Shown here: positions 41,530 through 63,493 of the stretch, one piece after another
Position numbering within the stretch: the stretch's first letter is position 1
How the letters are laid out: each line of letters begins with the position of its first letter
Source: Magallana gigas
Lineage: Eukaryota
Direction of reading: 5' to 3'
Assembly (NCBI RefSeq): GCF_963853765.1
Contig: NC_088859.1
Location: 37,138,001 to 37,202,000, forward strand
DNA length: 64,000 nucleotides
Made by a program: the position numbers and the translations under genes
The notes under the pieces: generated by a model
Seen by the model: only the letters and a program-made list of their open reading frames with translations
The model's database searches: none
Told to the model about the DNA's origin: nothing

Positions 41530-44500
41530 ATTTAAACAATATTTTATTATGTTAAAAAATATTACATAATAGGATTGGGCAGCAGGCAATCTGCCTATTT
41601 GAGCCCTCTCCTTTAACAGTCAATATGACAAACATTGATGGTACAATGTAACAATAGAATAAAGTAGAGAAAGACAAAGGAAAAATAAGTGGAATTAAGA
41701 TGCTTGGTACCGGGTATTATTTATGTACAAAATGAAAAATAGTTGTAGAAAGCTAGCAGTTCAGCTGTTTGAGTGACACTGTGAATAATGCATTAAAACT
41801 TAAATCTTTTGGTAGGTAATATATATGATCATGTACAATCTTAAATATAGCAACATTTTTGTTATAAGGCAAACTACTGTCCCCATATAACAATAAGTCC
41901 AGAGAGATGGGGATATCTAAATGTAAATTACTTATTGACTGTATAAAAACTTGCCTCTGTGCATCATAATGTGGACAGACAAAAAAATAATGATAAGCAT
42001 TTTCAGATACATAAACACACATATCACAAATAGAATTTTCACACAAAAAATGATTGAATAGGTCAGCATTTAAATTGCTTGCATTATTTCTTATCTGACA
42101 ATGTATAATATTTGCTTTTCTGTTTCCAAAGTCATAAAGTTTGTTTGGCTTTCTAAAGAATATGTTTTTTATGGCTTTTTTGAATGAAGACTCAGTTGGT
42201 AAAATTCTAATGTGAAGAGGTAATTCATTCCATACTTTTATAGACGAAGGTAGAAAACTGTTCATAAAGGCAGTTGTTTTTATCTGGGGTATAACAAATT
42301 TAAAATCATCTTGGTGTCTTAGTGAGTAATTATTTTGCGGTGTACATGGCATAAGTAAATCCTGTAGATATTTGGGGGCAAGACCATGGACCATTTTATA
42401 AAATAATGTGAGTTTATGAACCTTTCTTCTATCTGATAGTAGATCAATACCCAATTTATATCATATAGAGCTGACCTGGATGAGTTACTTCTAAGACCTG
42501 ATATAATCCTTGCAGCAGTTACTTGAATATCTTCTAGAAGTTTAACTTCTCCATCTGAACAATTATCCCAAACTAAATCAGCATATTCTAAAACTGGTCT
42601 AATAAATGAAAAATATATTTTCTTAGAGAGCATCTACATAGCTTATATTTAACAAGTTTCAATAGGTTTAACCTTATACAAGCTTTTTCATGAATAGAAT
42701 TAATATGTTGTTTCCAACCTCCATCATATTGGAGATTTACACCAAGATGGATGTGACTATCAACTTTTTGTATAAATGGACCATGGACACCAAACTGCAC
42801 AGGGGGATGCGATATATTTTTTCTACTAAAATCAAGGTTTTTGGTTTTACTGGGATTAAAATCAACTGCCCATATGTCAGACCATTTACATATTTTGTCA
42901 AGATCAGAAACAAGTGAATTTGTTACAGCCGGTGTGTCATTGTCAACAATAACATATATAGAAGTGTCATCAGCAAAAAGACGAAGATTGTTTGATATAT
43001 CATAAGACAGGTCATTAATATATAATAAAAATAAAAATGGACCAAGAACAGATCCTTGGGGAACACCTGAGGTAGTATGTCTGAGTGATGAGGAAAAACC
43101 ATCCAAAAAGACTTTTTGCTTCCTTTCTACTAAACAGTTCTCAACCCAGTTAGTAATTTGATTGCAAATGCCATATAGTTTTAATTTATATAATACACCT
43201 TTGTGCCATACCCTGTCAAAGGCTTTACTGATATCGCAAAAAACAAATCTCACATCTTTACCTTTATCAAGACTGGATATGATAGTATTATAAATTATAA
43301 ATTGGTAAGTTGTAGAATCTCCAGGTTGAAACCCAGACTGGTATTTGTAAATAATTTTATTTTCAAAGAGATAGTTGTGAATATGTTTAAAGATAATTTT
43401 TTCAAGGATCTTGCACAGTATTGAAGTAATAGATATGGGTCTGTAATTATTAACTTCTTGCGCACAACCCTTATTTTTGTATACTGGTGTTATATGGGAA
43501 ATTTTCCACATGCTAGGGAGTTTACCCAAGCATAGGGAAAGATTAAATAGTTTTGTAAGGGGTTTAACAATAGATAAAGATATATTTTTTATGATAAGGG
43601 GTGATATACCATCTGGACCCGAGGGTTTGTTTACATTTAAAATATGAATTTGATCCAATACCTCTTGGTCAGAGATTATAAGATTGTTCATATGGTTCGG
43701 TGGCCCAGGTCCATGTAACGGAGGGTCAGGGAGCTTAGGCTCTACAGGCAAGGATGAGATTTCAGCAAAATACTTGTTAAATGCATTAGCTTTGTCAACT
43801 GGATGAAACAGAGTTTGACCAGATGCTTTAAGAGGGGGTAGTGGTTTATGGCTATTATTTAGTTTAGTCAAAGATTTAATAATCCTCCACCATTTGGCAG
43901 GGGGTATTGTTTTATCAATCTGTGCTGTAAGTTTTTTATTGTAATTATCTCTAAAACGCCTAATTTCATCTATGACTCTATTTCTTAGGTATCTATAATT
44001 TCCCCAGTGAACAGGATTTTGAGTTTTACAAGCTTTGTGATGCATACGATTTCTTTTCCTCATTAATTTCCGAATTGTATTATTCATAAATGCTTTATCT
44101 CTAGGACGAACTGTAATAATTTTTGATGGTATGTGCTTATTAATGCATTCATTGGTTTTATCTAAAAAAAGATTTGTATATGTCATCAATGTTTTCCCCT
44201 TGGAAGACATCTTCCTCCCAATTAACCTGTCTAATGTCTTCATTAATTGCATTGTAATTAGCATATTTATAATCCCTCACTGTGCGCTTGTATGCATATT
44301 GCTTGAATGATTGAAATTTGATCTCAGTGCCTATTGTCGAATGAGTACTGCAAAATGGTGGAAGAATAAATGAATCTATAACTAGACTAGAGTTGTTGGT
44401 AAGGATAAGGTCAATACAGGTACCAGTGCTAACTGTAAAATTTGTGACATCATGAATTAAATTATCAAGACCAAGTCTTTGCACCATTTGTCGAAAATTA

Positions 44501-46140
44501 GTACCTTGATCACTCAAGACATTGACATTGAAATCTCCTAATAAAAACACTGGTAATTCACATTGTGCTACTTTTTCAAGATTTGAACAAAAAGGGTTCC
44601 AATAATCTGCCAGAGCACTTGGTGGTCGGTACAAAACACCAACAAGAATTTTTTTTACAATTAACATTAATTTCAGCCCATAGAATTTCTAAACCAGGGG
44701 TTGATAAATCAATTCGTTCAATAAAAGATAAATAACTTGAAATGTATATTGCAACACCTCCTCCTCGTCTTTTTCTGTCTTTCCTAAGAGGAGGGTAAAA
44801 ACCATCAATTACAATTGAGTCACTTTGAATAGAGTTGTCAAGATGTGTTTCACTTATACATATAACATCAAAATTAGACATTTCAGCAGTAACAATGTCC
44901 ACTTTTGGATATAAACTACAAACATTGTTGTGTGCAATACGAATAGAACTAAGTTTAACATTGGGCAAATCTGAGCCAGGCCCAGGGTTTTTTTCAACAC
45001 CTCCAAGAATTAACAATAATTATACAATAACGCCGTTGCTAAAAATTGCATCGTATTTAGAACATATCAAGAAAAGCTGAACATACCTTGGAATAATTAA
45101 TGTCCATGGCCTAGAATAAATTAAGTTTTTTTCAATCAAAAGTATCAAAAACAATGATGAACATATTATTCAGCATGGCCATGGACACAAGTAGTAGTCA
45201 GATGTATACATAAGACAGAAAATATAGGAACTGGTACCAACAAAGAGCAACAAATTCCGGAATGGAAAAATTGGGAGAAAAAATTAAACAAAGAAAAATG
45301 AACATATATACATGACAAAATAGCAATGATAGAAGCATGTAGGAATGTTTGCGTGTAATGAAAATGACATCATATCGTTTACCTATACAATGTGAAACGA
45401 AAGAGTTTGAGAATGGCCTGGACATTAGGATTTTAACAGCTGATAATCAGCTGACAAGGAATAGTGATTACACTTCCGAAGTTTCAAGGATCTGTGTACG
45501 CTGTTCACCAAGAAGTTCAATGGACAGCACGTCATCATCACTTCGGATCAATGATTTGGGACCACCTTGCGTTTTTTTGACGAAGATATTTCCCTCATAT
45601 GTCCAACACGAGTCAATTAGGCCATCTCTTTTGCACTAAAGCAGACGCGAAAACATCTTGGCGCGATTCTTGGTCAGTGCCTCATTGACGAAAACCTTAT
45701 ATCCACTCGAGGGGTTGTTGTTGTAGTTCTTGAGATTTTTCTTATTGCCATACACAGGGCACGGTCACGGTACCGCACGAAATTTACGATGATGTCTCTC
45801 GGTTGGTCGTTGCGGGAGCGTGGCTTTGGCCCAAGGCGATGTGAGTTACTGATGGTCCATGGGTTGAGGGTGGTACCAGTGGACTTCAGGATTACTTTGT
45901 TACATAGGTTGAGGATCAATTGGTCTGTGTTTTCTGGGTCTCCTTTTCAGTTTTGTGGGCTTTTTGCAATGCCAGAAAATTTTAGACAATTTTTTCTGGA
46001 ATACTGAGACATATCGTCAATTTGGCGATGCAGGTCTTTTATTTCAGCTCTCATTCTGTCAACTTCAGGAACAAGCTCCATCGCCAGAGCGTTAATACAG
46101 GCTTTAAATAATGAAGGGCATATTAAAAGCTTATACATTT
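41530..46140 (-). mobile_element. CR1/L2-group non-LTR retrotransposon, near full length, inactivated by frameshifts
   Basis: ORF1 remnants (DDMSQYSRKNCLKFSGI, SHRLG, RDIIV) lie at about 45400-46138. ORF2 is split over 45016-44576 and 44667-44158 (APE endonuclease: SETHL, GGGVAIY, GVLYRPP, LLGDFN, CIDLILTN), 44264-42588 (RT: YRPISITSILCKILEK, DISKAFDRVWH, GVPQGSVLGP, FADDT), 42633-42319 and 42454-41753 (C-terminal CxxC..H..C). The 3' UTR ends near 41530. Confidence 0.9.
44978..45019 (-). other. 2A-like (StopGo) peptide motif at the start of LINE ORF2: LLLILGGVEKNPGP
   Basis: It matches (G)D(V/I)ExNPGP except for D>G (codon GGT, one change from GAT) and lies directly upstream of the endonuclease domain. 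Confidence 0.7.
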
Positions 46141-49670: not shown

Positions 49671-52600
49671 ATGATGGAAAATCCTACAGTTTTTCTTCTG
49701 TATGCCAAGGATGGAATTAAGATTGCAGACACAGTCAAGGAACGTTTGGAACAAAACGAAACTACAGTACATGTTGCAGACGTTTTGAAAATCCATGAAG
49801 AGTTCCCTTCCTCATTATTGGTGCTGTTTTTAACCCCTGAGATGTTATCTCTGTTGAAATCACCAAATGCACCCGATCTCGAAAGTGTGCATCACAAAAG
49901 CAACAAATGTGCTTTATTTTTCCATGATACGATCAATTTCGCTGGAGATCCAGTCCAACAGATTCTTAATCAGAAAGTCCCTTCCTATAAAAATTGGCAA
50001 CCTTTTGTGATAGAAAAGAAAGTTCGTGGAACCGTTCTACAAATCTTAAATCTGATTGAGACGCAGGATGTTGAGATTCCAGACCTTGTGTCCGACTGTA
50101 AACTTTATCCAGATGATGTTTGGGAGGTATGTTTAAAAAAACATAGGAAACTAAGTTTTTTATTTAGTAAATTAGTTAAGTATTAATACTGTGTCATGAA
50201 ATTTTAGGACAAGCAGACTGTGTTCATATCCTTTAACTCCGAGAGAACACAGGAGGACAAGGTGACGGTTGACGTAGATCAAACCTTGTTTGAAGCCACC
50301 TGGGTTAACCCGTACACCTTTATGTTCACATACAAGGGTAAAATAAAGATTCTGATCATTAGAATAGATGTTATGCAAATTATAATGTTTCAATGAAATA
50401 TGTTTATGGCATATGTAATTACTGACATCGGTATTGATAAAACTAAGTCAAGAATAATACATACTAGTATTCAGCAATATGTACTTGCATATTGACAAAC
50501 ATACTATTTTGTGAGAACATTATGGGAAAAATTACTTAGAGTATAGTCATTTGTTTTAAAATTCGGAATTTTTAGCACAATTGCACTAGTGAGCTGTGTT
50601 AGGTCTTATTTTCCGTTAATCTTTGAACTCTATGCAGATTGCAGGGATTCTCCTCAGCATACGGTGACTGTGTGCGCGAACGATGCCTATGTAGGAGCAT
50701 GTAAGGTACTCATCAAGAACAGGGATCAAATTCTCCTAGAAGAAATCAATGACGAGAATTCGTCACTTCATTATTTGCAAGACATCATGCAAACAATTAA
50801 AGACACGGATGTTGAATTACACACAGTTACCACTGATTCCAGAATTCTGAAGGGCACTAGGCAACTATTGAAAAGACTGAACCAGACAGTTTCAAAGGGT
50901 ATATTCATTTATACCTAGCCATTCAAAGCGACAACGATTTAAAGGGAAAACTCAATGTTGACTAAACTACAATTACAGATACTGTCTTGTTCATCAATTT
51001 TATATTTTGTGTTTTAGAAAGTTCCGCCCATGTGAACAAGGGGACTCAAGATAAACAGACCGAGGAAGAGGTGATCTTTAATAATACGACATTTTTTTTT
51101 TGGGGGGGGGGGGTGAGCTTTAGAAGAATCTGATTACAGTTAAGTGTATTCAATTATTTTTTTTTTTTAATAGAGTGCTAAACCTTCACGGCTAGAAAGA
51201 ACCATTCGGGACGTCAGAAATAAATGGGAAGGTATGGTGTCTGGTACGAGTAACACACATTTATTATTAAACAGTCAGTATAATATATGTATAAGGTTTA
51301 ACATGAAAATTATATTATATGTATAAGGTTTAACATGAAAATTATATCGGGTTCAAGTCACGTATCTCTGATTTTAACAAACAGTAAGTTTAATACGATA
51401 TAATAAATGATATAAATTAACAAACTGATTTTCTGTCCAAAGAGTCACAAAGAGTCGTGAATATGTTTACTATTCAAAACTGTGAAGCATATCATGCTTT
51501 GTTAGCAACAGAAAATGAGTTGAACTTGTCTACTAGGTTAATATATGGTGCGATAACATTGCGCAAAAAGATACTTATTATAGTATTTTTTTTTTAAAAT
51601 TCGGACTTATGAGTACAAACACACTAAAGAGCAGTACTGGTTCGTTTTTCTGTTAATCTTTGAACTCTTTGCCGATTGTAGGGATTTTATTCAGCATATC
51701 GTGCTTAGTCAACAATAGAAAATGAGTAAAAATTGTCTACTAGGTTAATAGTATACAAATATTGACTGGGGTTGAGGGCAACATTGATTATATTAGCCCC
51801 CGAGGGACGAAATATTTCCCGACGCGAAGCGGAGGGTAATATTTTCGTCCCAAGGGGGCTAATGTAATCAATGTTGCCCAAAAACACAGTCAACATTTGT
51901 TTTGTTATATGAAGAAACAAACCAAAATTTAAGAAAGTAATTGAAAACAGATCGCCGTAATTTTCTCAGCTCAACGAAGAATTCACGAATTCAATTTTGT
52001 GCAAAGTTCATTTCCAAAATATCCATAGCATCAAACGGTCACTGGTGATATTCCACCGTCCGTAAGAATTAACATACAGATGTTCTACCTGATTTTACTT
52101 CACAGTAATTCGCGAATCCTTATATCCGTTATGATAGCAAACCGTCGCATTGCGCGTCCGTTATTTACTTGCTTTGACTGACTGTCTATTAAAACGTCAC
52201 CTTGTTTTGGAGTCGCGAAGAGTTATTTACGTCATCGTTTACGAATCAACAAATCATAGGCGATTATTTGAAATAGAGGGAATGTTCTCTAGATATTATT
52301 CCTAGCCGGTCAATATCAAAAAAATATTGACCGGTCAATATTTTTCGGACGAGCTAATATTACAATTATTGACTATTCGTCTATAAAGAGTTATATAGTA
52401 AGAATATACTACTGAATATAACAAATGTATTTATTTCAGGAATGAATTTAATTTCGACCTATGTTATACGATTTAACATAACTTGGGACAGTTTACGCTT
52501 TATAAACCGCGAAGCAGTTTATAAAAAAGCGTAAACTGTTCCAAGTTATGTTATACTCGTATAACATAGGTAGAAATTAAATTTATTCCTTATAATTTAA

Positions 52601-52800
52601 TTTTCTACTATTTAAATCAGATAATAAGGCCCATTTATTAGTTAAACTATGTGAATTTGTACAGAATTTAAACGTAACGTCAAGCGGATTAATACATGTA
52701 CCTTTCGCACGCACGTCGTATTGTGACGTAGGCAAGTTATGTTATACGATATATGTGAATTTTTTTAGCCAATCAAATGAGGCGTTACAATCAGAATTAA

Positions 52801-52882
<82 letters not shown>

Positions 52883-54005
52883 TCAAAGGGATATAGCATA
52901 CAACCATATTGAAAGCTGATTTTTTTCTCGCAACAAATAGTTTTGTTAAAATTCACATATTTGGTTTTTGTTATTGTACTGATATATAAACTGTACATAT
53001 GTTAAATAAGCGAAAAAATGCAGTTTGGGGTAAAAAATGAATTTCAAAACAAATTCAATAAGACAATTTAGTAAGAAACAACAAAAGGCCTTGGGGGAAT
53101 CAAACTCAACTTTATTATAAAATTACCTTATTTTCCACCTTAAAACTGAACATTACGTTTAAATAGGTACGGTCACACAGATTTATAACCCCTTTGATTT
53201 TGTTGCTTTCGATTGCACACCTGAAACTCGTGTTGTATAACGTCTAGTTAAACCAAACGCTTTGTCTACGCAACGAAGCTTTGCTCAAAGATAGCGTGTG
53301 GTTGAACGGGAAAATCATAAAAATTAATTTTAAAAAATGATAAAATATATTTGGAAAATAGATAGTATTCTTTGCATGTTATTCATTTAAAAAACTGATG
53401 CTGATGGACACAACTCTGTTCATATATATAAAAAAAAACAACAACAACCAAACAAACCAAAGAAAACACCTTTTTTTAAATGCAATTTGGTTTAGAAAAC
53501 TAAACAGTTAAATGATATGAAAGTAAAAAAATGGTTATGGAGCTATCAGTAACCTTTAATTTAAAACCAAACGTTTTGTCTACGCAACGCAGCTTTGATC
53601 AATGTAATGGACTAGTTTTACAATATTGTTGCCCTATTATATGCATTTATGTCGTAACACTATGTATAATAAAGATAATGGTTTTGATTTTTAAGATCGT
53701 TCAAAAAGAGACGCCGATGGTCCATTAATATCTAAATTGGTAAGTATATCAAAGGAAATTCGTATCCTAGTGTTGGATTTAGAAAATTGATACACAAGAC
53801 CAAAAGATAATATTCTTTAATCTTAGATTGATAAGTTTATGAAGTTTCTTATCATTTTAAGCGAAAACGAAGTCAACGATTTACCAAAGCTCTGCAAAAT
53901 CTGAATAAAGAAGAAGACATTCCTCACATAAAGCGGAATTCAAGTTTAATCAAAAGATTGCCTTCGGACTTTTTCGACGTCGCGAAGGGTCTATTCAAAC
54001 GTTAA
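49671..54005 (+). CDS. Short BCAP/BANK1/Dof-like TIR + DBB protein, copy 1 (about 381 aa, no ankyrin repeats)
   Basis: In-frame exons: A 49671-50126, B 50208-50337, C 50638-50898, D 51018-51070, E 51174-51231, F 53696-53739, G 53862-54005. Exon A has a TIR-like beta/alpha pattern (VFLLYAKDG, LLVLFLTPEML, YKNWQ). Exons A-end/B/C align by eye to the BCAP DBB region (LYPDDVWEDKQTVFI vs VQPDRIRCGAETTVYV; WVNPYTF vs VENEYTI). Confidence 0.7.
51545..51705 (+). pseudogene. Dead duplicate of the exon C acceptor region of TIR-DBB copy 1
   Basis: TTTTTCTGTTAATCTTTGAACTCTTTGCCG-ATTGTAGGGATT...TCAGCATA parallels 50609-50661, with the acceptor CAG changed to CCG. Confidence 0.6.
51756..52427. mobile_element. 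Non-autonomous element carrying a 144-bp terminal palindrome with a GCGAAGC apex (Crypton-like?)
   Basis: Palindrome 51756-51899 has its apex at 51824-51830. A second small palindrome CCGGTCAATAT..ATATTGACCGG lies near 52306-52335. The right boundary and family are inferred. Confidence 0.5.
52438..52802. mobile_element. Second non-autonomous element with a 153-bp palindrome and GCGAAGC apex
   Basis: Palindrome 52438-52590 has its apex at 52509-52515. Its arms are unrelated to the previous hairpin, and AGCCAATCA lies near the far end. Confidence 0.5.
52803..52880. repeat. (TA)n microsatellite
   Basis: Directly visible. Confidence 0.95.
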
Positions 54006-55318
54006 ATATCATTTTTTTCTTATATACTATAAAAAGAGTATGAAAATGATAAGAAGTCAGACTAACTTTCTTTAAATTTTTTTAAATAATTGCTTTATAT
54101 GGAGCTTATACAATATACTTTTTATTTCTGAATGACAAAAACATAGCTCTAACTGTATGTATTCTTATAATAATGAAGCTATTGTCATGCTGAGGAATGT
54201 ATATACTGCATGCTGGAAACGATGAAAAGTGGGAGTCTTGGAATAATGACCGGGTCCTTTTTTCCTTAAAAAATGACCGCTGTCATTTTAGGCATGTTTG
54301 GTCCTTTATCGACCGTAATGACGAAATTATTATTTTGATTATTTTATCGTAGATAGAATATATATAATTGTTAGAATATTTCCTTTCTTTTGATTTTTAA
54401 ATGATTAGAATAGATTGTTGCGGAATTGTCCGAATGATTTTGAAGATTTTGTAAATAAACTAAACTACATGTATGTATTTGTGTATTTATTTTTTAAAAG
54501 GTGTGCATATTGCTGTTACAGTCATGGAATATTACATCATGATTGATTGATTAATTGATTGACAATCCAATATTTATCATGGTACATATATAAAATTCTA
54601 GTTATTCCAAAATGCAAAATTGATTTTAAAATGTTTTAAATAAATAAAATAGCATTTATCTTGTATCATAGATGCAGAAAAATGGAACATATTCTATTTA
54701 TCGGATATTTTGTATTCGTATTTAATTTAAAATGTTGGGCTACATGCTGCAGAAGTGCACTAAAGCTTTCAACGCAGGTCAGCAGTAGCGAACTAAGACA
54801 ACGTCTACTGAATTTAAATGTGAAGTCACAGACATTGTGCCACTGAATAAGCCAAGAGGAAACACTGTACCTTAGATAACTAGACTATTTCTGCAGCTTC
54901 ACATTTAAAACGAGCAAATCATCTTATGTACAAAGTTTTGTTTTAACTCCTTAATTGTTATTATCTGAGTTAAAAAAGAAGCTATGGTGATTCAATCAAC
55001 CAATTTTATATCATTGCCAATATCTTTTTTCTTTTTCTTTGTGTACACAAGACATTTAAAGTCCAATTAAGAACAGTAATGAATTTATGAATGATTTTTT
55101 ATAGTTCCTACCCTGCAACCCTGCTTTCCACAAAATTGGACTAAACATTTTACATTGCATGGGACACTAGATACAAGTTCTGTACTAGACTTGTATGAAT
55201 GTATTTAAAAAGAACTATTCTGTATGGGAAATGAGATTAGGGAATTTTGTATTGTTTGTTTGTTTATATGTTTGTTTGGGTTTTTGGTTGTTGCAAGAAT
55301 TGCCAAAATATCCAAATA

Positions 55319-55492
55319 CAGTAAAACACGTTTATAACGAAGTGCCAGGGACGGGTGATTTTACTTCGTTATAAGCGAAATTCGTTATATCTGTCAAGTT
55401 AACAACATATTTTATAGTCATGGGAAATGAAAATCACTTCGATGTAAGCGTCAATTTATTGTAAGCGTGTTCGCTATGACCATGTTTTACGG
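55319..55492. mobile_element. Tc1/mariner(pogo)-type MITE, 174 bp
   Basis: TA-CAGTAAAACACG...CATGTTTTACGG-TA. Confidence 0.7.
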
Positions 55493-56303
55493 TACCTTGC
55501 ACAGAAATTGATTATCTTACGCGGAAAGGGTGAAGAATGCCTTCCATGATCTTTCCATTCAGTGGAAAATGTATAGAAACTATCAATAATTCAAACCTGT
55601 GACCAAGTGTTTAGTAAAAACATTGCATAAAGACACGCTATTTGTTTAAACATGTTCTGGTATGCATTGATTTTACAGGGTTGTTTAGATAATGCATTTT
55701 GTTACATTTAAGTTGTCACATTTATGACTGCATTATGTAGTAAGCTATTTTAATGTTTGACTGTTTATTGACAAACTACTACACTATAATGACTGTTTCC
55801 GTAATCAGTCTATTTAGTGCTGAATTCATGGAAAACGATTTTTTAACAACCTTAATCAAATAACCTTTACCTTGGATTGCAGTTACATGTCCGGAATTAC
55901 GATTACCAACAAGGTCAGTTGTTATAACGTGTTTGCTGAATAATTGACGATAGTTTTATTTTTAAATATATGGACATATATTTCAAACAATCAAGCTTCT
56001 AAAGCCATTTTACAAAATGCATATTCATTCTTGTTTTAAAGCAAACCGTCACAGGCTCAAAAATGAAGTCTTTATCTATCGCGGAACGTTATTTCATCTA
56101 AAGTTATCTCTTCCGTAAAGCTGTTTTGATAAAATTTCTACTTCTTTCTAATCTTGACTTCTTTTGATATTTGCACATAACTGTAATTAAAAACTGTCAA
56201 CTGTCTTTACACTGCCAGTCGATGAAAATAAATTGATTGTTTATGATTTAGACACATGGATCTTTAAGCAGATTTTTTAAACGTTATATTTCAGAAAATC
56301 GTC

Positions 56304-58319
56304 ATGCTAGATTTTCCCATAGTTTCTCTCCTTTGTGCGCATGATGGAATTAACATTGCTAATACGGTCAAAAAAAGTTTAGAAAAAAATGAAACCAAGG
56401 TACTTATTGTTGACGTTTTGCAAATCAGTGAAGCACCTCCTTCCTCTGTACTGGTACTATTTTTAACCCCAGGGATGTTATCTGTGTTGAAATCATCACA
56501 TGCACCCGATCTGAACAGTGTATATAGCAGAAGCAAAACGTGTGCTTTGTTTTTTCATGAGACAATTGACTTCTATGGAGATTCGATTCAACAATTGTTG
56601 CAACAAACGATTCCTTCATTTACAAAATGGGGTTGTTTACCTACAGGAAAGAGAATTAGAGTTATCGTTTTAAAAATCATAGAACTCATTGACACAGTTG
56701 AAGAGGAACCAGATCAAGATGTTCCTGGTCTTGTGTGGGACTGTAAGCTTTATCCAGAGAGTGTATGGGAAGTGAGTTTGTAAAATCATTAATCTGTTAT
56801 TTTATGTTATTTGCTTCTATGTTTTGTAAAATGTATAATTAATTTGAGATTTCAGGACAAGCAGACTGTGTTCATATCCTTTAACTCCGAGAGAACACTT
56901 GAGGACAAGGTGACGGTTGACGTAGATCGGACCTTGTTTGAAGCCACCTGGGTTAATCCGTACACCTTTATGTTTCAGTATAAACATGGTAATTTTTTTT
57001 ATTTGTTTTCATCTTTAAAAACCTCTCAGACTTTACAACAAATCTTGGCAGTTTCAAACTGTTTAATACACTAGATGATATCCCGGGGAAGCGCGAGAAT
57101 GAACACTTTACACATAAATATGATTCAATACTTAAAATAATGAACTCTGTTGTTTTTTTTCATTTTTGTACATACTTTGTCCGAATGTTTTCTTAATTTC
57201 TATCTAAGCCTATTCTTTTAAATTGAAATAAAAACACAACTGCACGGCTGAATACTACGAGTAGTATTGCAGCTAACTGAAAAAAATAACAACTTTTCAA
57301 ACGCATGAGTGGGTATTTAGTTCGTCGTATCTCTATTGTTCTTTAAGTCAAATTTCTCTATTATTTTCACCACTGTCCTAAGAATTTCAGATAAAAAAAA
57401 ACTGTTTTGAATAACAACAACTGGGAAGGGGGCCACCCCCGTCCAAATATAACTTCTCCGTTTTATGCATAGACTGTTTATGATTTTCAAAATAATGTAT
57501 AAGGTTTACTACTCTACCAACATGTCGTTCTATGAAAAATATATAAAATTAAAAAACGCTAGTGAATGCATATTTTGTTCGATATTTTAAACCAAAATTG
57601 TTAGATACAAAGCATCTCGCACTACACTTTCCGCCATTTTATTAATCAACTTTTTTGTATTGACCAAAGATGTTCAATTCAAGGTATCTGCCAGTAATGC
57701 TTGATGAATCGTCTTATACTGTGTATTTGCCATGACGTTAATTAGTCAACCCGTGTTCTTGGTTACCACTCTTGATAGTTATATTCCATACTCTTGTCAT
57801 GTTGTAAATTTTGAATTTACTGGATGGGTGTAGATACAAAGTTGTCATGTTGTAAATTTTGTATTTACACTAACTCAGTAAATTCAAAATTTACAACATG
57901 ACACTCTCACCAGAGGACGCGCTACGCAAGCGTTCTATCCATCAAAACTAAAATCGCGCATTAAAAAGACAGATTGCCTGATTTTATTTATTCAACACTT
58001 GTCAAATTTTCACTTCTATGTTACTCTAAGTAAGATTCCAGTAACTAGAAACAATTGTCAGGTAAAATTCAATTATAGCTTACGAACATCATATGTCTCG
58101 TGTTGAAATACCAAAGATGTAAGCAGTAACTCTAGTGCAGGCATGTTTGAGTTTATTGGCAAAAGGTCGTAATTTATAAGTATAGATGTTATCTGTTTGA
58201 TCATTATGCATTATTAATATGCCTTTTAAATGTCATGAATATAATTATCTATACTATTTTATAATAATAGACTCGAATTGTTGGGCTTTAATATCAAGAA
58301 TTTGGAAGAGAACTGTCTT

Positions 58320-58402
<83 letters not shown>

Positions 58403-61400
58403 CATCATTGGCACTTATTACCAAGTTTTTTTTTCTCAATCAAGATTCGCTTATTAATAATCAACGAAAATTCCTGTAAACAAATCCGGAAACCTACCGT
58501 ATTTTTGGGATTTTACAATCTTGCGCATGCGCATTACATTTACGCTTAATCACGGGTGGCTCTTTAGTTTATATTTCCACAATATCACATCTGCATGGTA
58601 TACTCAGAAACGAAATTACAAATACGTGTAAATTTTCCTTGAAAATTTGTCATCTATTCTGTTTATCAAAGGAAATACGGGAGATGACTCTTAACTCATT
58701 AAATATGAAATTTTTCACATGAAAAATCCCGAGAGTTCCGAATGTCAACATGGTGTGTAAATTCGAAGCGAGTAAAAAAGTTGGTAAAAAAAGTGTTGAA
58801 TTCTTCATAAATTGGATTAAATGTTTTTTAGATGAAAGGTATTTACTGCCTCAAAATGGTTTGTTATGAATATTTAACTGTTATTTTCAATGCAGTTTTC
58901 TTGATTTTCTCCAAAATCGTTTCGGAGCGATTCTGCAATTTTTGGTACATTACGGGTATATGGGAGGCATTTTTACTGTGGTGAAGGCCAGTCTCGAGAC
59001 ACAGTTACATGTAGATTATTCTAACTAAGCAGAGTGTAGTGAAAAATTAATAGCATTATTGTAGGATTAAGCTTGGTTATGTAAATGTCAACAATACGGT
59101 GTGTCGAAGTTTCTATTTCGTAAACGTCCGATATAATTTGCAATATCAACCCGTGCACGCACGGGTCAAAGTCTAGTTTCAGTTATAAGTATACATGTAA
59201 TTATTATTGCTTCCTAAAGTAGGGCCAGTTATTATTGATGCAGGTTAGATACAACACTCGATATTTTCATAGATCGGAGAAACAGACATTTCTTATGAAA
59301 ATTTCCAAAAAGTTCCTATTGCTGTTAATAATGCTATTTAAAGGCGGTGGACACATATGAATGAGAATGTTTTTCATAAATACACAAATTATGTAACCGT
59401 GTATATGTTGTATGTATTCTTTATGATGAACTTAAAATCATAATCGCTTAACATTATTAACGTTACAATGGTTTTTCAATCCTTGGATTCTTTTTTATCA
59501 AGATGGAATCTCATTCGTTAGTAAAAAAGTTAATAAAATGATTTAGGACATCTATTTTTTTTTTTATATATCTGCACGCGTAAGTATGAATATATTTTTG
59601 CAGGCTGCAATGCAAATGGCCAGCGCTTGGTAACGGTTTTTGTAAACGGAGAATGCCTAGCCACTTCTATGATTTTCGTTAAAGACAGGAGCCAGATACT
59701 ATTAGGAGAAATCAACGACTCAGCTTCGCCACTTCATTTCTTAAAGGACATTGTACAATCTATCAAAGACACAGATAGCGAATTGCCTACTGAGAGCATA
59801 GATGTCAAACTACTGGAGGGCACCAAACAGTTTTTAAAAATGTTGGCTCAATTACCTGACTTTACAGATGGCAATAAAAGCGGTATGACTACTGTAAACC
59901 AACTTTTATTTGCGTGCGAGAAATTAGCGCGAGGTTCGCTAGAGCCTCGTCGTCGCGAATATATCTCGCCGCGAACCAGTCTTCATCGTATGGTTGTTAT
60001 AACAAAATACGGGTCTGGATAATGCTTCGTCGCGAACATTAGTCGTCGCGAACCAGTTTATTGGAAATAAATCGCGAAATAACGTCGCCGCGAATAAATG
60101 TTGGTTTACAGTATTGCTACCATAAAAAGAACGTTGGTGAATGACATGATTTGGAATGAATATGTGTCTTAATAAAGAAAGTAACGATAAAATTTGTAAC
60201 GTGTCATTTTGTTGTTGAGTCAGATAGTTCCCACAAACAGAAAATAAAGACTCTAGAGGAACCTACCTTGGAAGAAGATCTTTCTTATGTAAATACACTT
60301 TTTTAATAAATGTTTATTGAACAGAAAGAGTAACTCATATAAATTTTCCTCAATTTAAACAAAAAAAAAACAAGCAATGATTCTATGAAGTACATATGTA
60401 TTGAAATAACAGGTTATGGGGTTGTAAATTATCGTGATATAAACCAATCAGACAACAGTAAAGCCAAAGACTTTTACTACCTTTGACAGAGTACCGAGCC
60501 TGTCGTCCGAAGATCCAACAGTCAGGACATCAGAAATAGAAGAGAGATATCAATACCAGGTACTTTAATGCAACAGGAAAAACATTATACATTTTTTCGC
60601 AAACCAAGCACTTTAAAAATAGTTTTTCTCAAATATCACAGTTTTATGGGTGTGTGTGTTTTTGGTGGGTTTTTTTTTGGGGGGGGGGGTGTTTTTTTCT
60701 TCTTTTTTTTAATCTTTTTTTTTTTTGGTGGGGGGGGGGGGGTGTAATTTTCATGCTTTTTTCTTAGGGGTGATTTATAAAGTTTGTCAAACCAGAATTC
60801 CATACAGTCATTAAAAAGTCAAAAATTGTCATTTAATATTTAGAAAAATGCCTTAGAAATCAATTTTTGAAACTCCAATTGCAATCTAATTCAACTGCTG
60901 ATTTTCTATAAATCTAGAAGGTACTATATTTTTCGCTAATCAAGAAAATGTCAGTGGGGAACAGTCACGATTTCAGCAGGCTGATTTGAAATCTTAATAT
61001 TATATAATTATAATGTTTAGAATGGTTATTAGGTTGTTTTTAATGGTCAGTCCTGATTTGAGTGTCAAGCACACTAATTAATTTTATACTTACTACATGT
61101 AGCAATATTTTCATATTGCAACTTCTTAGACTGTTACAATCACAGCCCGTTAATTTATAATTTATAATTGAGAACTCTGTAAGCCTGGATGAGTTCCACA
61201 TCATTAATTATTGTTAAAGTCAAAGTTACTTGCCAGGATAAAACCCTGTTACAAAAACCTACCATTTTGACAATCGAGACTTGTTCGAAATGTATGTTTT
61301 GTATTGCGTTGTTAAACTAGATACTTATTATTTTAAGATTGTTCAAGAAAAGACGCCAACACTATATGTAAATCTACAGAGGTAAGTATACCAAATACCA

Positions 61401-62377
61401 ATTATTATGTGACGTATTTTTATGTGTTCATCTTTGCACATGACGTAGTAAGTTTATTTAGTCCTGAATTGGTGGAAAACTTTAAACAAATAACCTTCAC
61501 CTCGGATTGCTGCAACATTTCCGGAATTACTATTACCCACGAGGTCAGTTGTTATACAGCATTTGTTAAATTCAATTCTTTTTTGACCTTAGACACATGG
61601 ATCTTTAATCATTTAATTTATATCACAGGATATTTTTCAGAAAATCGTCATGCTAGATTTCCCCGTAATTTTTCTACTTTTTGCTCATGATGGCAAAAAG
61701 ATTGCCGATACAATCAAAAAAGGTTTAGAAAAAAACGAAATTACGGTGCATAGCGTTGATATTTCGCAAATCAGTGAAGCGTTCACTTCGTCTGCACTGG
61801 TACTATTTTTGACCCCGGGGATGTTATCTGTGTTGAAATCAGCACATGCACCAGATCTGAACAGTGCATATAACAAAAGCAGCACTTGTGCTTTATTCTT
61901 TCACGAGACAATCAACTTCACTGGAGATTCGGTCCAACAATTGTTAAAACAAACAATTCCTTCATTTCAAAAATGGAGTTGCTTTCCTACAGGAAATAGA
62001 GTTCTAACAATCGTTTTAAAAATCATAGAACTCCTTGATACAGTTGAGGAGGGACCAAATCAAGATGTTCCAGGTCTTGAGTCCGAATGCCAGCTTTATC
62101 CAGAGAGTGTGTGGAAGGTGAGTTTGTAAAAAGTTATTCAGGTTTTTCCGTTTCCAACGGGAGACCTTGTACTGCTTGTAATGGCTTTTCTTATAACACA
62201 ATTTTTCTTCTAGACGTGTTTCAAAATCTTAAGCTTGTTTAAAACTAATTTCATTCTATTTTTCAGAGTAAAGTGTAATAATAATAATTTTTAAAAATGA
62301 AATATTTACCTTCTAATCATATTATTAACAAATTTATTATAAAGTTATATAAATGTGAAATCAGATGTCAATTTGTG

Positions 62378-62426
<49 letters not shown>

Positions 62427-63493
62427 ATTGAAACGTAAATGACCATCCGCTATAGTTTTTGAAATGAGCAAAACGTTTGCTGGGCCCTATGAGCTCGTGA
62501 TTTGGTTCAATATATCACTGCTAAAGCATGTTAAAGCAAATGCTACATCGACCAGTTTCTGGTCTTTAAAAAGGATGAGGTTCTGAAAATGGGTGAGGGG
62601 TGAGGAGGAAAGTTATTTGAAAGAAGAATATGTATAGAATCGGAATTTTTATAAGAGGCATGAGAATTGGGAGGCCGTCTAAAGATGTTCAGGGCAGGCA
62701 AGCTTCCAGGATCTCATGAAAATTTGAGATATTCAAGATTCATTTATTAGTTTCAAACCAAAAGAGGACTTTTACGATCGTTATCTTAAAGATATTAGAA
62801 ATTAACATTTACGTCAGAATATAACTGTAATAATATGATGTTGTCTTATCAACATTAATATCGCAGAGGTTCTGAAATCACCTTCATACCATCGTCCATT
62901 CCTTAGTGTCAAATTCGTATTTTTCAGTACTTATCATATAATTTTAATGGCATTTAAAATCCATTAATTTAGGTATTCTTAAGGACTATATAGTATAGTA
63001 TAGGACTAGAGTTCTTTTTAATACAAAAGGATCAGCTGCCATCTTCTTAAACTACAAAATAAAATTTTTGCATAAAATTTATACCAAAGGGAATCAGCCT
63101 TCATGAATACTGACTTCAAAGGCATATAATGCAAAGAAATGTCTAATTGTAAATTTTGAATTTACTTGGTGGGAGAAAATACAAAATGTACAATTCTCAT
63201 GTTGTAAATTTTGCATTAGTACCCACCCAGTAAATTCAAAATTTTCAACTCGGAAAAAACATTCACAGGAACCACACATTACTTGATCACTGAGTTTTGC
63301 ACTAGCTTTATGATACTGGTTCTATGTTTTGTAAAATATACATTTAATTTGAAATTTTAGGACAGGCAGACTGTGTTCATATCCTTTAACTCCGAGAGAA
63401 CACTTGAGGACAAGGTGACGGTTGACGTAGATCAAACCTTGTTTGAGGCCAACTGGGTTAACCCTTACACCTTTATGTTTCAGTATAATCATG
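56304..63493 (+). CDS. Multi-module TIR-DBB protein (copies 2 and 3 apparently fused in frame); continues beyond the window
   Basis: In-frame exons: A2 56304(acceptor 56295)-56771, B2 56856-56988, C2 59604-59882, D2 60224-60288, E2 60490-60559, F2 61338-61381 (phase 0), A3 61641-62117 (phase 0 acceptor), B3 63361-63493. No terminal G-like exon is visible between F2 and A3. Confidence 0.65.
57790..57905. repeat. Small palindromic MITE-like element (copy 1)
   Basis: GTCATGTTGTAAATTTTGAATTTACTG ... CAGTAAATTCAAAATTTACAACATGAC, with an internal direct copy of the arm. Confidence 0.6.
58323..58398. repeat. (TA)n microsatellite
   Basis: Directly visible. Confidence 0.95.
59150..59176 (+). mobile_element. 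Helitron 3' terminus
   Basis: The hairpin CCCGTGC-AC-GCACGGG is followed 7 nt later by CTAG and then T, the canonical Helitron 3' end. Confidence 0.65.
59892..60111. mobile_element. Tc1/mariner-type MITE, 220 bp, in intron C2-D2
   Basis: TA-CTGTAAACCAAC...GTTGGTTTACAG-TA, with internal CGCGAA repeats. Confidence 0.78.
62382..62425. repeat. (CT)n microsatellite
   Basis: Directly visible. Confidence 0.95.
63145..63250. repeat. Small palindromic MITE-like element (copy 2)
   Basis: TTGTAAATTTTGAATTTAC ... CATGTTGTAAATTTTG ... CAGTAAATTCAAAATTTTCAAC, the same layout as 57790-57905. Confidence 0.55.

What the first reader, a model, noticed from the sequence alone, without database searches (positions are those of the whole stretch)
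49671..63493. Tandem array of minimal TIR-DBB (BCAP/BANK1/Dof-like) modules lacking ankyrin repeats and the long C-terminus
Three homologous modules share exon architecture (TIR exon; DBB exons B and C; short linker exons, with F 44 nt in both complete copies). In BCAP the TIR engages MyD88/MAL-type adaptors and the DBB drives dimerisation, followed by ankyrins and YxxM sites. These modules stop after DBB plus a charged linker, which suggests an expanded family of TLR-pathway decoys or scaffolds. The TIR exons are strongly diverged between copy 1 and copies 2/3.
Basis: partly seen in the sequence, partly recalled or inferred. Interest (0 to 1): 0.75.

Follow-up and report, generated by a model that had tools for sequence, protein, structure and literature searches.

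The report
Oyster ankyrin-less BCAP-like TIR-DBB genes
Three neighbouring Pacific oyster genes encode short, expressed relatives of the vertebrate immune adaptors BCAP and BANK1 that keep the TIR and DBB domains but lack the ankyrin repeats and PI3K-docking tail, so they look like natural versions of a lab-made BCAP fragment that dampens Toll-like receptor signalling.

Summary
The window is Magallana (Crassostrea) gigas chromosome C7. On the + strand it holds three tandem paralogous genes with the same exon plan. Pfam TIR_3 and DBB do not hit single exons. The annotated copy-1 protein scores 19.7 bits on DBB against a cut-off of 22.2. An AlphaFold model of that protein, compared with 48,161 PDB representatives, has the BCAP TIR (5FOR, Z 11.3) first and the BCAP DBB (6SWS, Z 11.1) second. 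Its five best Swiss-Prot fold matches are BCAP and BANK1. There is no ankyrin exon, and the only YxxM lies in a domain-2 strand, not the tail. The genes are spliced, expressed and under purifying selection (dN/dS about 0.33). They form an oyster-only clade, and the array sits next to the same eIF4E gene in Saccostrea. Copy 2 lacks exon G, and its 3' end is unresolved. Function is inferred only: a dimeric TIR regulator without PI3K coupling. This is a new variant of a known kind, of moderate interest.

The parts
49671..50126 (+). Copy 1 exon A: start codon plus the whole BCAP-type TIR domain (152 aa)
   Evidence: The exon is an ORF ending at a GT donor. It is identical to residues 1-152 of XP_034314161.2 (P0025). 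Model residues 4-130 match 5for_A at Z 11.3.
50208..50337 (+). Copy 1 exon B: first half of the DBB (TIG) domain, 130 nt
   Evidence: AG..GT borders. Nucleotide identity to the other two copies is 90-93%.
50638..50898 (+). Copy 1 exon C: second half of the TIG domain plus the C-terminal helices of the DBB, 261 nt
   Evidence: Exon model. Model residues 140-249 match 6sws_A at Z 11.1.
51018..51070 (+). Copy 1 exon D, charged linker (53 nt)
   Evidence: Matches P0025. Borders. pLDDT is under 50 here.
51174..51231 (+). Copy 1 exon E, charged linker (58 nt)
53696..53739 (+). Copy 1 exon F, 44 nt
53862..54005 (+). Copy 1 exon G: conserved last exon (47 aa plus stop) with a predicted helix and an invariant LPxDFF motif.
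   Evidence: Invariant columns across 8 orthologues and paralogues.
56304..56771 (+). Copy 2 exon A (TIR domain, 156 aa)
   Evidence: The RNA joint 56771>56856 is seen in three runs.
56856..56988 (+). Copy 2 exon B (133 nt)
   Evidence: RNA joints on both sides.
59604..59882 (+). Copy 2 exon C (279 nt)
   Evidence: RNA joints 56988>59604 and 59882>60224.
60224..60288 (+). Copy 2 exon D (65 nt)
   Evidence: RNA joints.
60490..60559 (+). Copy 2 exon E (70 nt)
   Evidence: RNA joints.
61338..61381 (+). Copy 2 exon F (44 nt). It ends in phase 0 with an intact GTAAGT donor, and no exon G follows.
   Evidence: No exon-G match lies before copy 3.
61382..61649 (+). Interval between F2 and the copy-3 ATG. 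It is transcribed, unlike the other introns, and contains the AG acceptor just before 61641. Splicing F2 to that acceptor would keep the frame.
   Evidence: RNA contigs run unbroken over 61456-61700, 61504-61699 and 61540-61656, while 60588-61335 has zero depth. Frame check.
61650..62117 (+). Copy 3 exon A (TIR domain, 156 aa)
63361..63493 (+). Copy 3 exon B (133 nt). Exons C-G lie beyond the window at L001:954-1232, 1369-1433, 1623-1692, 2537-2580 and 2744-2887.

Best explanation
The region is a tandem array of three paralogous, transcribed protein-coding genes of Magallana gigas. They belong to an oyster-restricted, ankyrin-less branch of the BCAP/BANK1/Dof adaptor family. Each gene encodes about 380-400 aa with four parts: a BCAP-type ('cryptic') TIR domain from one exon; a DBB domain (a TIG Ig fold plus C-terminal helices) from two exons; a disordered charged linker of about 50 aa from three tiny exons; and a conserved 47-aa C-terminal exon with a helix and an LPxDFF motif. 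Copy 1 is intact and is annotated as 'uncharacterized protein'. Copy 3 is intact if a shifted splice pair is used. Copy 2 has lost its last exon.

The mechanism is inferred, not shown. The DBB would dimerise the protein and so present two TIR domains. These would engage the TIR domains of oyster TLRs and MyD88-type adaptors and alter signalosome assembly. With no ankyrin repeats and no YxxM or proline-rich tail, the proteins cannot couple to PI3K the way BCAP does. They would therefore act by occupying or nucleating TIR assemblies. Inhibition is the most likely outcome, as for the engineered human BCAP TIR-DBB fragment. The conserved C-terminal motif probably docks a partner that is still unknown.

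My odds are about 0.9 for the TIR-DBB family identity, about 0.55 for action in TIR/TLR-type signalling, and about 0.4 for net negative regulation.
For: Three collinear copies are present. Exon borders are confirmed by GT..AG RNA joints in three RNA-type assemblies and by raw stranded reads. Copy 1 is identical to XP_034314161.2.

A profile of the three A exons finds only 24 clusters among 1.84 billion representatives. Every one that a source names is bivalve. [quoted passage not shown]

On Pfam DBB, subfamily members P0005, P0075 and P0072 pass the cut-off, and copy 1 scores 19.7 bits against 22.2. The family profile's best PDB hit is 6SWS, the BCAP DBB, at E 0.007.

The AlphaFold model has pLDDT 85-93 over residues 1-130 and high confidence over most of 143-222. 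VIA-align against 48,161 chains ranks 5for_A first (Z 11.3) and 6sws_A second (Z 11.1). Foldseek gives 6sws_A a target-normalised TM of 0.72. The top five Swiss-Prot AlphaFold hits are PIK3AP1 (three species) and BANK1 (two species), covering query 1-274. The top AlphaFold DB clusters are DBB-domain proteins.

The N-domain profile aligns end to end (E 6e-4) with the oyster's own Pfam-positive TIR_3 exon.

There is no ankyrin exon, the only YxxM lies in a TIG strand rather than the tail, and dN/dS is about 0.33 in the TIR exon.

From the literature: human BCAP TIR-DBB (residues 7-330) is dimeric and represses MAL/MyD88-driven NF-kB as well as full-length BCAP does, and three helices after the TIG stabilise the dimer (PMC7128310). 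The oyster model has three helices after its TIG domain.
Against: Pfam TIR_3 never hits the family, apart from one relative at E 0.084. Copy-2/3-type proteins give no Pfam DBB hit.

CheY-like receiver domains score nearly as well as TIRs on the N-domain (Z 9.9 against 11.3). The TIR call therefore rests on rank, on the joint two-domain match and on family context.

The third DBB helix is modelled at low confidence. The homodimer prediction gave no verdict.

No binding, localisation or immune-challenge expression data were obtained. Drosophila Dof, a member of this family, works in FGF signalling rather than TLR signalling. In the cited paper the monomeric BCAP TIR enhanced signalling, so the sign of any effect is uncertain.
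Confidence: 0.6

Rival explanations
1. The proteins are TIR-DBB adaptors, but they act positively. The DBB-dimerised TIR pair would nucleate MyD88-type assemblies, or would link a receptor to a new effector through the conserved C-terminal LPxDFF exon. On this reading they are signal-promoting scaffolds, not decoys.
For: The domain evidence is the same as for the best explanation. A C-terminal exon conserved across Magallana, Crassostrea virginica and Saccostrea (invariant R, E, P, I, L, LPxDFF), with dN/dS 0.40, argues for a partner-binding function beyond simple occupancy. In PMC7128310 the authors suggest BCAP may act 'by enhancing filament nucleation', and the BCAP TIR alone raised NF-kB output.
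Against: In the human system every dimeric construct containing TIR-DBB repressed signalling. There is no known effector-docking motif in the tail: no YxxM and no PxxP.
Confidence: 0.25
2. The N-terminal domain is a generic flavodoxin-like or receiver-like fold rather than a working TIR, and the family has nothing to do with TIR signalling. It could instead be a Dof-like scaffold for receptor tyrosine kinase signalling, or have a lineage-specific role.
For: There is no Pfam TIR_3 hit. CheY-like receivers score Z 9.8-9.9, close to the TIR hits. The nearly invariant columns of the N-domain alignment include no acidic residue. Dof works in FGF signalling (PMC5241739, introduction).
Against: The top structural hit of 48,161 chains is specifically the BCAP TIR, and the adjacent domain's top hit is specifically the BCAP DBB. 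Whole-protein fold searches put BCAP and BANK1 first across both domains. The profile aligns collinearly with a Pfam-positive TIR_3 exon from the same genome, which has the same one-exon layout running from the ATG to the domain end.
Confidence: 0.1
3. The array is partly decaying, and copies 2 and 3 are pseudogenes or non-functional duplicates.
For: Copy 2 has no exon G and no in-frame stop after exon F. In copy 3 the exon C donor reads TT at the ancestral position. No M. gigas protein of 220-700 aa for copies 2 or 3 was returned.
Against: All remaining exons of copies 2 and 3 keep open frames. dN/dS between them is 0.23-0.45 at dS 0.18-0.5. Copy 2 is correctly spliced in several RNA runs. 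A GT one base upstream plus an AG four bases upstream restores the frame in copy 3. Copy-3 orthologues in related species are full-length transcripts. The missing database entries may reflect length limits or withheld records.
Confidence: 0.15
4. This is an ordinary BCAP/Dof orthologue whose ankyrin and tail exons lie further downstream.
For: None was found.
Against: Transcript-derived ORFs stop at 380-401 aa. No ankyrin-like exon lies in 45-74 kb. The array is followed about 6.6 kb downstream by an eIF4E gene on the other strand, as in Saccostrea. A canonical gene with a TIR_3 exon and an ankyrin exon lies elsewhere, at C7:1.538-1.543 Mb.
Confidence: 0.02

Closest known systems
Vertebrate BCAP (PIK3AP1)
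   Same: It has an N-terminal cryptic TIR followed directly by a DBB (TIG plus helices). It gives the best structural matches for both domains: 5FOR at Z 11.3 and 6SWS at Z 11.1. AlphaFold models of the chicken, human and mouse proteins are the top three Swiss-Prot hits.
   Different: BCAP is about 800 aa, with ankyrin repeats, a proline-rich region and YxxM sites that recruit PI3K p85. The oyster proteins are 380-400 aa and have none of these. They carry a family-specific C-terminal LPxDFF exon instead. Sequence identity is only 10-13%.
Vertebrate BANK1
   Same: It has the same TIR-DBB head, and it ranks 4-5 among Swiss-Prot fold hits. [quoted passage not shown]
   Different: BANK1 has ankyrin repeats and a long tyrosine-rich tail. 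The window genes have neither.
Engineered human BCAP TIR-DBB fragment (residues 7-330; Lauenstein et al. 2020, PMC7128310)
   Same: The domain content matches the oyster proteins: TIR plus TIG plus three helices. The fragment is dimeric and represses MAL/MyD88-driven NF-kB as well as full-length BCAP does. It is the best functional analogy.
   Different: It is a laboratory truncation, not a natural gene. It lacks the oyster linker and C-terminal exon. The oyster proteins have not been tested for the same activity.
Bivalve short BANK-like / 'DBB domain-containing' proteins (Ostrea edulis XP_048762332.2, Saccostrea XP_061182371.1, Potamilus, Sinanodonta, Solemya; five or more loci at M. gigas C7:17.66-17.71 Mb)
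   Same: They are homologous over the N-domain and the DBB, with E down to 3e-15 against the exon-A profile. The N-domain is likewise encoded by one exon starting at the ATG.
   Different: They keep an ankyrin region (EFPTLLHFGAKFGL...) and pass Pfam DBB clearly. One also keeps a tail YxxM and PxxP. In the tree they fall outside the 100/100-supported ankyrin-less clade, which sits on a long stem. Their post-DBB region shows no profile similarity to the window genes' tail.
Drosophila Dof (stumps/heartbroken)
   Same: It is the founding invertebrate member of the DBB family.
   Different: It is a large FGF-receptor docking protein with ankyrin repeats. It was not compared directly here. This row rests on the introductions of PMC5241739 and PMC7128310.

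Membership tests
BCAP/BANK1/Dof (DBB-domain adaptor) family | DBB domain detected by Pfam PF14545 above its gathering score | tested here: inconclusive
   The window copy-1 product P0025 scores 19.7 bits (E 8e-4) against a cut-off of 22.2. Subfamily orthologues pass: P0072 at 23.2, P0075 at 25.5 and P0005 at 27.5. Copy-2/3-type proteins P0073 and P0074 give no hit. Single exons give no hit. The six-frame search of the genome with PF14545 did not list the window.
BCAP/BANK1/Dof (DBB-domain adaptor) family | DBB fold: a TIG/IPT Ig domain followed by C-terminal helices, as in PDB 6SWS | tested here: met
   6sws_A matches at Z 11.1, rmsd 3.1 A, with 106 of 113 residues aligned to model 140-249. 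It ranks second of 48,161 chains. Foldseek gives a target-normalised TM of 0.72 and E 1.4e-5. The family profile's best PDB sequence hit is 6sws, E 0.007. The model has helices at 224-233, 238-251 and 259-285.
BCAP/BANK1/Dof (DBB-domain adaptor) family | N-terminal BCAP-type TIR detected by Pfam PF18567 (TIR_3) | tested here: not met
   There is no TIR_3 hit on any window exon or subfamily protein. The only hit is a distant relative, P0019, at E 0.084. The genome's TIR_3-positive exon lies elsewhere, at C7:1542210-1542542.
BCAP/BANK1/Dof (DBB-domain adaptor) family | N-terminal domain has the TIR fold of BCAP (PDB 5FOR) | tested here: met
   5for_A matches at Z 11.3, rmsd 3.0 A, with 120 residues aligned to model 4-130. 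It ranks first of 48,161 chains. Other TIRs (TIR-1, RPS4, SARM1, SIGIRR) score Z 9.4-10.1 and CheY-like receivers reach 9.9. hhalign of the N-domain profile against the oyster TIR_3 exon gives E 6e-4 over 126 columns.
BCAP/BANK1/Dof (DBB-domain adaptor) family | Ankyrin repeats following the DBB | tested here: not met
   tblastn with four bivalve ankyrin regions finds nothing better than E 1.9 in 45-74 kb. P0006 hits its ankyrin part only in the other C7 clusters. The alignment shows the ankyrin block absent from this subfamily.
BCAP/BANK1/Dof (DBB-domain adaptor) family | Long C-terminal tail with YxxM (PI3K p85) and proline-rich docking sites | tested here: not met
   The tails are 71-119 aa with 0-2 tyrosines, no YxxM and no PxxP. 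The single YTFM lies inside the domain-2 segment NPYTFMF, a predicted TIG strand.
BCAP/BANK1/Dof (DBB-domain adaptor) family | Dimerisation through the DBB | tested here: inconclusive
   The homodimer prediction for residues 140-290 scored 0.31 against a mark of 0.32. The tool's verdict was 'no answer'.
BCAP/BANK1/Dof (DBB-domain adaptor) family | TIR-TIR association with MyD88/MAL-type adaptors or TLRs | not testable with these tools
   This needs co-immunoprecipitation or biophysics with oyster MyD88 and TLR TIR domains.
Enzymatic (NAD-cleaving) TIR domains such as SARM1/TIR-1 | Invariant catalytic glutamate | tested here: inconclusive
   The fold resembles TIR-1 and SARM1 (Z 9.8-10.1). Across 26 N-domains the invariant or nearly invariant columns are T55, P56, H85, L99, W109, I125 and P147, and none is acidic. 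No residue-level structural superposition was available.

The most novel reading that the evidence does not exclude
Oysters may have evolved a natural 'TIR-DBB only' class of BCAP-like regulators. These would be uncoupled from PI3K and carry a new conserved C-terminal docking peptide (LPxDFF). In M. gigas, loss of copy 2's last exon leaves an intact phase-0 donor. If that donor splices to the acceptor before copy 3's ATG, the frame is kept, giving about 757 aa with two TIR-DBB units in one chain. Such a product would be a covalently tandem TIR adaptor, which has no known counterpart in the BCAP/BANK/Dof family.
Probability: 0.15. Interest if true: 0.7.

Novelty: new variant of a known kind. 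Interest (0 to 1): 0.5.

Why it matters
Oysters have greatly expanded TLR and MyD88 repertoires, but little is known about what restrains them. The window genes are annotated only as 'uncharacterized protein'. Full-text searches found no paper on them or on bivalve BCAP/BANK-like genes. If they behave like the engineered human TIR-DBB fragment, they would be the first natural BCAP-family members that regulate TIR signalosomes by dimeric TIR occupancy alone, without PI3K coupling. That would make it possible to separate the two proposed modes of BCAP action. It would also give aquaculture immunology a small, tractable set of candidate regulators. The finding shows as well that standard Pfam thresholds miss this branch, so surveys of TIR-domain proteins in molluscs probably undercount it.

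Tried and rejected
- Pfam on single exons gave only noise.
- AlphaFold on the three-sequence exon-A alignment gave an unusable model with pLDDT 45. It was replaced by a 30-sequence full-length alignment.
- Foldseek against PDB with the two-domain model was cluttered by integrin-beta and anthrax-toxin-receptor-type 'Rossmann-like plus Ig' proteins. Only 6SWS was informative.
- The homodimer prediction for the DBB gave no verdict. It counts neither for nor against dimerisation.
- hhalign of the subfamily tail against the ankyrin-plus-tail region of the BANK-like proteins found no relationship. The idea that exon G is a degenerate ankyrin remnant is therefore unsupported.
- I tried to find how NCBI models copies 2 and 3, and whether a fused product exists. 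Two protein searches within 210-700 aa returned no M. gigas product. A third, using an alignment headed by a 522-aa sequence to widen the length range, returned only unionid and Solemya proteins.
- The single read-laying run did not list any joint leaving exon F2, and most joints and loose ends were not shown.
- The search of earlier findings returned nothing.
- The first try at look-up of sequencing runs failed because the machine was busy.

Full report
**Where the window is.** The window is G000:C7:37138001-37202000 of a 564-Mb assembly in 29 contigs. The annotated product of copy 1 is XP_034314161.2, 'uncharacterized protein [Magallana gigas]', on a contig of the same length as C7. The organism is therefore the Pacific oyster.

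**Observation.** tblastn of the copy-1 exons against the window finds three copies of exon A (E 1e-102 self, 4e-53 and 2e-53), three of exon B and two of exon C, and nothing else. The third exon C lies about 950 bases past the window end, in L001. No fourth copy exists in the 10 kb on either side.

**Gene models.**
- Copy 1 has seven coding exons: A 49671-50126, B 50208-50337, C 50638-50898, D 51018-51070, E 51174-51231, F 53696-53739 and G 53862-54005. All have AG..GT borders, and the translation equals XP_034314161.2, 381 aa.
- Copy 2's exons A-F are fixed by GT..AG joints in three RNA-type contig sets. Three of these joints are also seen in raw stranded poly-A reads whose first mates lie on the minus strand, as expected for a plus-strand RNA. 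The exons are 56304-56771, 56856-56988, 59604-59882, 60224-60288, 60490-60559 and 61338-61381, giving 353 codons with no stop.
- Copy 3 has A 61650-62117 and B 63361-63493, then C-G in L001, ending at window-extended position 66887.
- Exon F is 44 nt in all three copies.

**What the proteins are.** Pfam finds nothing on single exons. The six-frame genome searches with PF14545 and PF18567 hit other places on C7, not the window.

A profile of the three A exons, run against 1.84 billion representative proteins, finds only 24 clusters. Every hit that a source names is bivalve, from Magallana, Saccostrea, Ostrea and Potamilus. Several unnamed hits are exon-A ORFs called on metagenome contigs, and they end in the same W-x-V-S read-through of the splice donor.

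The full-length hits fall into two groups.
- The first group has proteins of 380-401 aa, collinear with the window genes.
- The second group has proteins of 441-487 aa that score 1e-12 to 1e-17 on Pfam DBB and carry an ankyrin region. [quoted passage not shown]

Within the short group, Pfam DBB is passed by P0005 (27.5 bits), P0075 (25.5) and P0072 (23.2). It is narrowly missed by the window's copy-1 product (19.7 against 22.2) and not seen in the copy-2/3-type proteins. A profile of the whole family has the BCAP DBB crystal structure 6SWS as its best PDB sequence hit, at E 0.007.

**Structure.**
- Model quality: an AlphaFold model of the copy-1 protein, built on a 30-sequence alignment, is confident over the N-domain (1-130, block means 78-93) and over most of the second domain (residues 143-222). 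Confidence falls in the helices beyond about residue 240, and the linker is disordered.
- PDB comparison: aligned without pre-filter to 48,161 PDB representatives, the best match is 5for_A, the BCAP 'cryptic TIR' (Z 11.3, 120 residues, model 4-130). The second is 6sws_A, the BCAP DBB (Z 11.1, 106 residues, model 140-249). Other TIR domains (TIR-1, RPS4, SARM1, SIGIRR) follow at Z 9.4-10.1. CheY-like receivers reach 9.9, so the N-domain call rests on rank and context rather than on a wide margin.
- AlphaFold libraries: against the Swiss-Prot AlphaFold models, the five best hits of 550,129 are PIK3AP1 of chicken, human and mouse (E about 5e-11, query 1-274 against hit 6-311) and BANK1 of mouse and human. 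Most of the top AlphaFold DB cluster hits are DBB-domain proteins and PIK3AP1, and apart from fragments they are 564 aa or longer.
- Same-genome TIR exon: the N-domain profile aligns end to end (126 columns, E 6e-4) with the TIR exon of a canonical BCAP/Dof-like gene at C7:1.54 Mb. That exon passes Pfam TIR_3 (31.1 bits) and has the same layout, one exon from the ATG to the domain end.

**What is missing and what is added.** No ankyrin-like exon exists between 45 and 74 kb (best E 1.9). P0006 hits its ankyrin segment only in the other C7 clusters. The tails have 0-2 tyrosines and no YxxM or PxxP. The single YTFM lies in the domain-2 segment NPYTFMF, a predicted TIG strand.

The proteins do not simply end in a charged linker, however. 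The last exon is conserved across Magallana, Crassostrea virginica and Saccostrea, with invariant R, E, P, I and L residues and an LPxDFF motif. Its dN/dS between copies 1 and 3 is 0.40, and part of it is predicted helical. It shows no profile similarity to the ankyrin-plus-tail region of the BANK-like relatives.

**Family context.** The M. gigas genome holds the three window copies plus at least three, and probably five, BANK-like loci at C7:17.66-17.71 Mb. Those have N-domain, Pfam-positive DBB and ankyrin exons. The canonical gene at C7:1.54 Mb is separate.

In a maximum-likelihood tree the ankyrin-less proteins form a clade with 100/100 support on a long stem. Copy 1 groups with 'type 1' transcripts of related species. 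Copy 3 groups with 'type 2/3' transcripts, and copy 2 branches just outside them. The two Saccostrea genes are sisters.

In Saccostrea echinata the two genes are also in tandem and are followed by an eIF4E gene on the opposite strand. An eIF4E gene lies about 6.6 kb beyond copy 3 in M. gigas. The array therefore occupies the same locus in both genera.

**Selection.** dN/dS is 0.33-0.36 in the TIR exon, with dS about 0.84 between copy 1 and copies 2/3 and 0.45 between copies 2 and 3. It is about 0.8-1.05 in the D-F linker between copy 1 and the others.

Exon B is odd. It is 90-94% identical in nucleotides in all pairs, while other exons are 60-74% identical between copy 1 and copies 2/3 and exon B's flanking introns are about 70-78%. 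Its dS is a third of that of exon A. Short-tract gene conversion or a nucleotide-level constraint would explain this, and I could not tell which.

**Integrity of copies 2 and 3.** Copy 2 has no exon G, and exon F2's GTAAGT donor lies 268 bases before copy 3's ATG. The interval between them is transcribed: contigs run unbroken over 61456-61700, 61504-61699 and 61540-61656, while the preceding intron has zero depth in all four runs.

One 817-base contig continues for about 330 bases past F2 with sequence that is not collinear with the genome there. Its destination was not listed. Splicing F2 to the acceptor before 61641 would keep the frame, adding three residues and then copy 3's Met. Splicing to copy 3's exon G would also be in frame. 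Read-through runs into a stop near 61690.

In copy 3 the exon C donor is TT at the ancestral place. A GT one base upstream together with an AG four bases upstream of the usual acceptor restores the frame with one extra residue.

**Mechanism (inferred).** Lauenstein et al. (PMC7128310) showed four things about human BCAP.
- The BCAP TIR binds MAL.
- The DBB is a TIG domain whose dimer is stabilised by three following helices.
- TIR-DBB (residues 7-330) is dimeric.
- TIR-DBB represses MAL/MyD88-driven NF-kB as well as TIR-DBB-ANK or full-length BCAP, whereas the monomeric TIR enhances it.

The oyster proteins are natural equivalents of that fragment, and their model has three helices after the TIG domain. 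The most likely working is therefore a DBB-dimerised TIR pair that engages TLR or MyD88-type TIR assemblies and changes their growth, with no PI3K coupling. The C-terminal motif would dock a further partner. The homodimer prediction gave no verdict. Binding partners, localisation and regulation are untested.

**Verdict.** The genes do not meet the ankyrin and tail features of the BCAP/BANK1/Dof family, but they share its two signature domains by fold and by transitive homology. I class them as a new variant of a known kind. No paper on them was found. Interest is moderate, at 0.5.

Noticed in passing
window 50208-50337, 56856-56988, 63361-63493: Exon B is 90-94% identical in nucleotides among all three paralogues. 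Other exons are 60-74% identical between copy 1 and copies 2/3, and exon B's flanking introns are about 70-78%. Its dS is about a third of that in exon A. This points to exon-limited gene conversion or a nucleotide-level constraint, and it remains unexplained.
   Followed up: partly
window 61338-61700: Copy 2 has lost its last exon. The F2-to-A3 interval is transcribed although the neighbouring intron is silent. Splicing F2 to the acceptor before 61641 would make an in-frame two-unit protein of about 757 aa.
   Followed up: partly
L001:1225-1240 and 1360-1372 (window-extended 65225-65240 and 65360-65372): In copy 3 the exon C donor reads TT where copies 1 and 2 have GT. A GT one base upstream and an AG four bases upstream of the usual acceptor would compensate, adding one residue.
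   Followed up: partly
G000:C7:17664531-17708349: A second tandem cluster on the same chromosome holds at least three, and probably five, BANK-like genes. They have N-domain, Pfam-positive DBB and ankyrin exons, mostly on the minus strand.
   Followed up: partly
G000:C7:1538392-1542542 (L003:291-764, minus strand): This is a canonical BCAP/Dof-like gene. Its first coding exon passes Pfam TIR_3 (31.1 bits) and has the same layout as exon A of the window genes, one exon from the ATG to the domain end. An ankyrin-like exon lies 4 kb downstream.
   Followed up: partly
G000:C7:37211517-37215259 (minus strand) and L004: An eIF4E-family gene lies about 6.6 kb beyond copy 3. In Saccostrea echinata the two-gene array is followed by an eIF4E gene in the same orientation, so the locus is syntenic.
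   Followed up: yes
window 57596-59278 and 59840-60213: Stretches inside copy 2's introns reach RNA contig depths in the hundreds to thousands, with many mismatches and loose ends. They are probably expressed dispersed repeats or transposon fragments rather than part of the gene.
   Followed up: no
window 41753-45016, minus strand: A non-LTR retrotransposon with reverse transcriptase (RVT_1, E 1e-31) and a sub-threshold endonuclease/exonuclease/phosphatase-type match (23.3 bits against a 24.5 cut-off, E 6e-5), split over several frames.
   Followed up: partly
window 34975-36279 (+) and 27203-32029 (+): A single-exon rhodopsin-family GPCR (7tm_1, E 3e-53) and exons of a DNAAF5-like HEAT-repeat gene (TPR_DNAAF5, E 1e-78) lie upstream of the array.
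   Followed up: partly
window 38061-39152, minus strand: A 363-aa ORF with no Pfam match.
   Followed up: no
protein cluster of P0011/P0066 (JGI/IMG metagenome): A 163-aa 'NTP pyrophosphatase' in a metagenome annotation matches the exon-A profile over its whole length (E 8e-10). It ends in the W-x-V-S splice-donor read-through typical of these exon-A ORFs. It is most likely animal DNA carrying a wrong label.
   Followed up: no
window about 52790-52870 and 58320-58400: Long (TA)n microsatellites lie downstream of exon E in copy 1's E-F intron and in copy 2's B-C intron.
   Followed up: no
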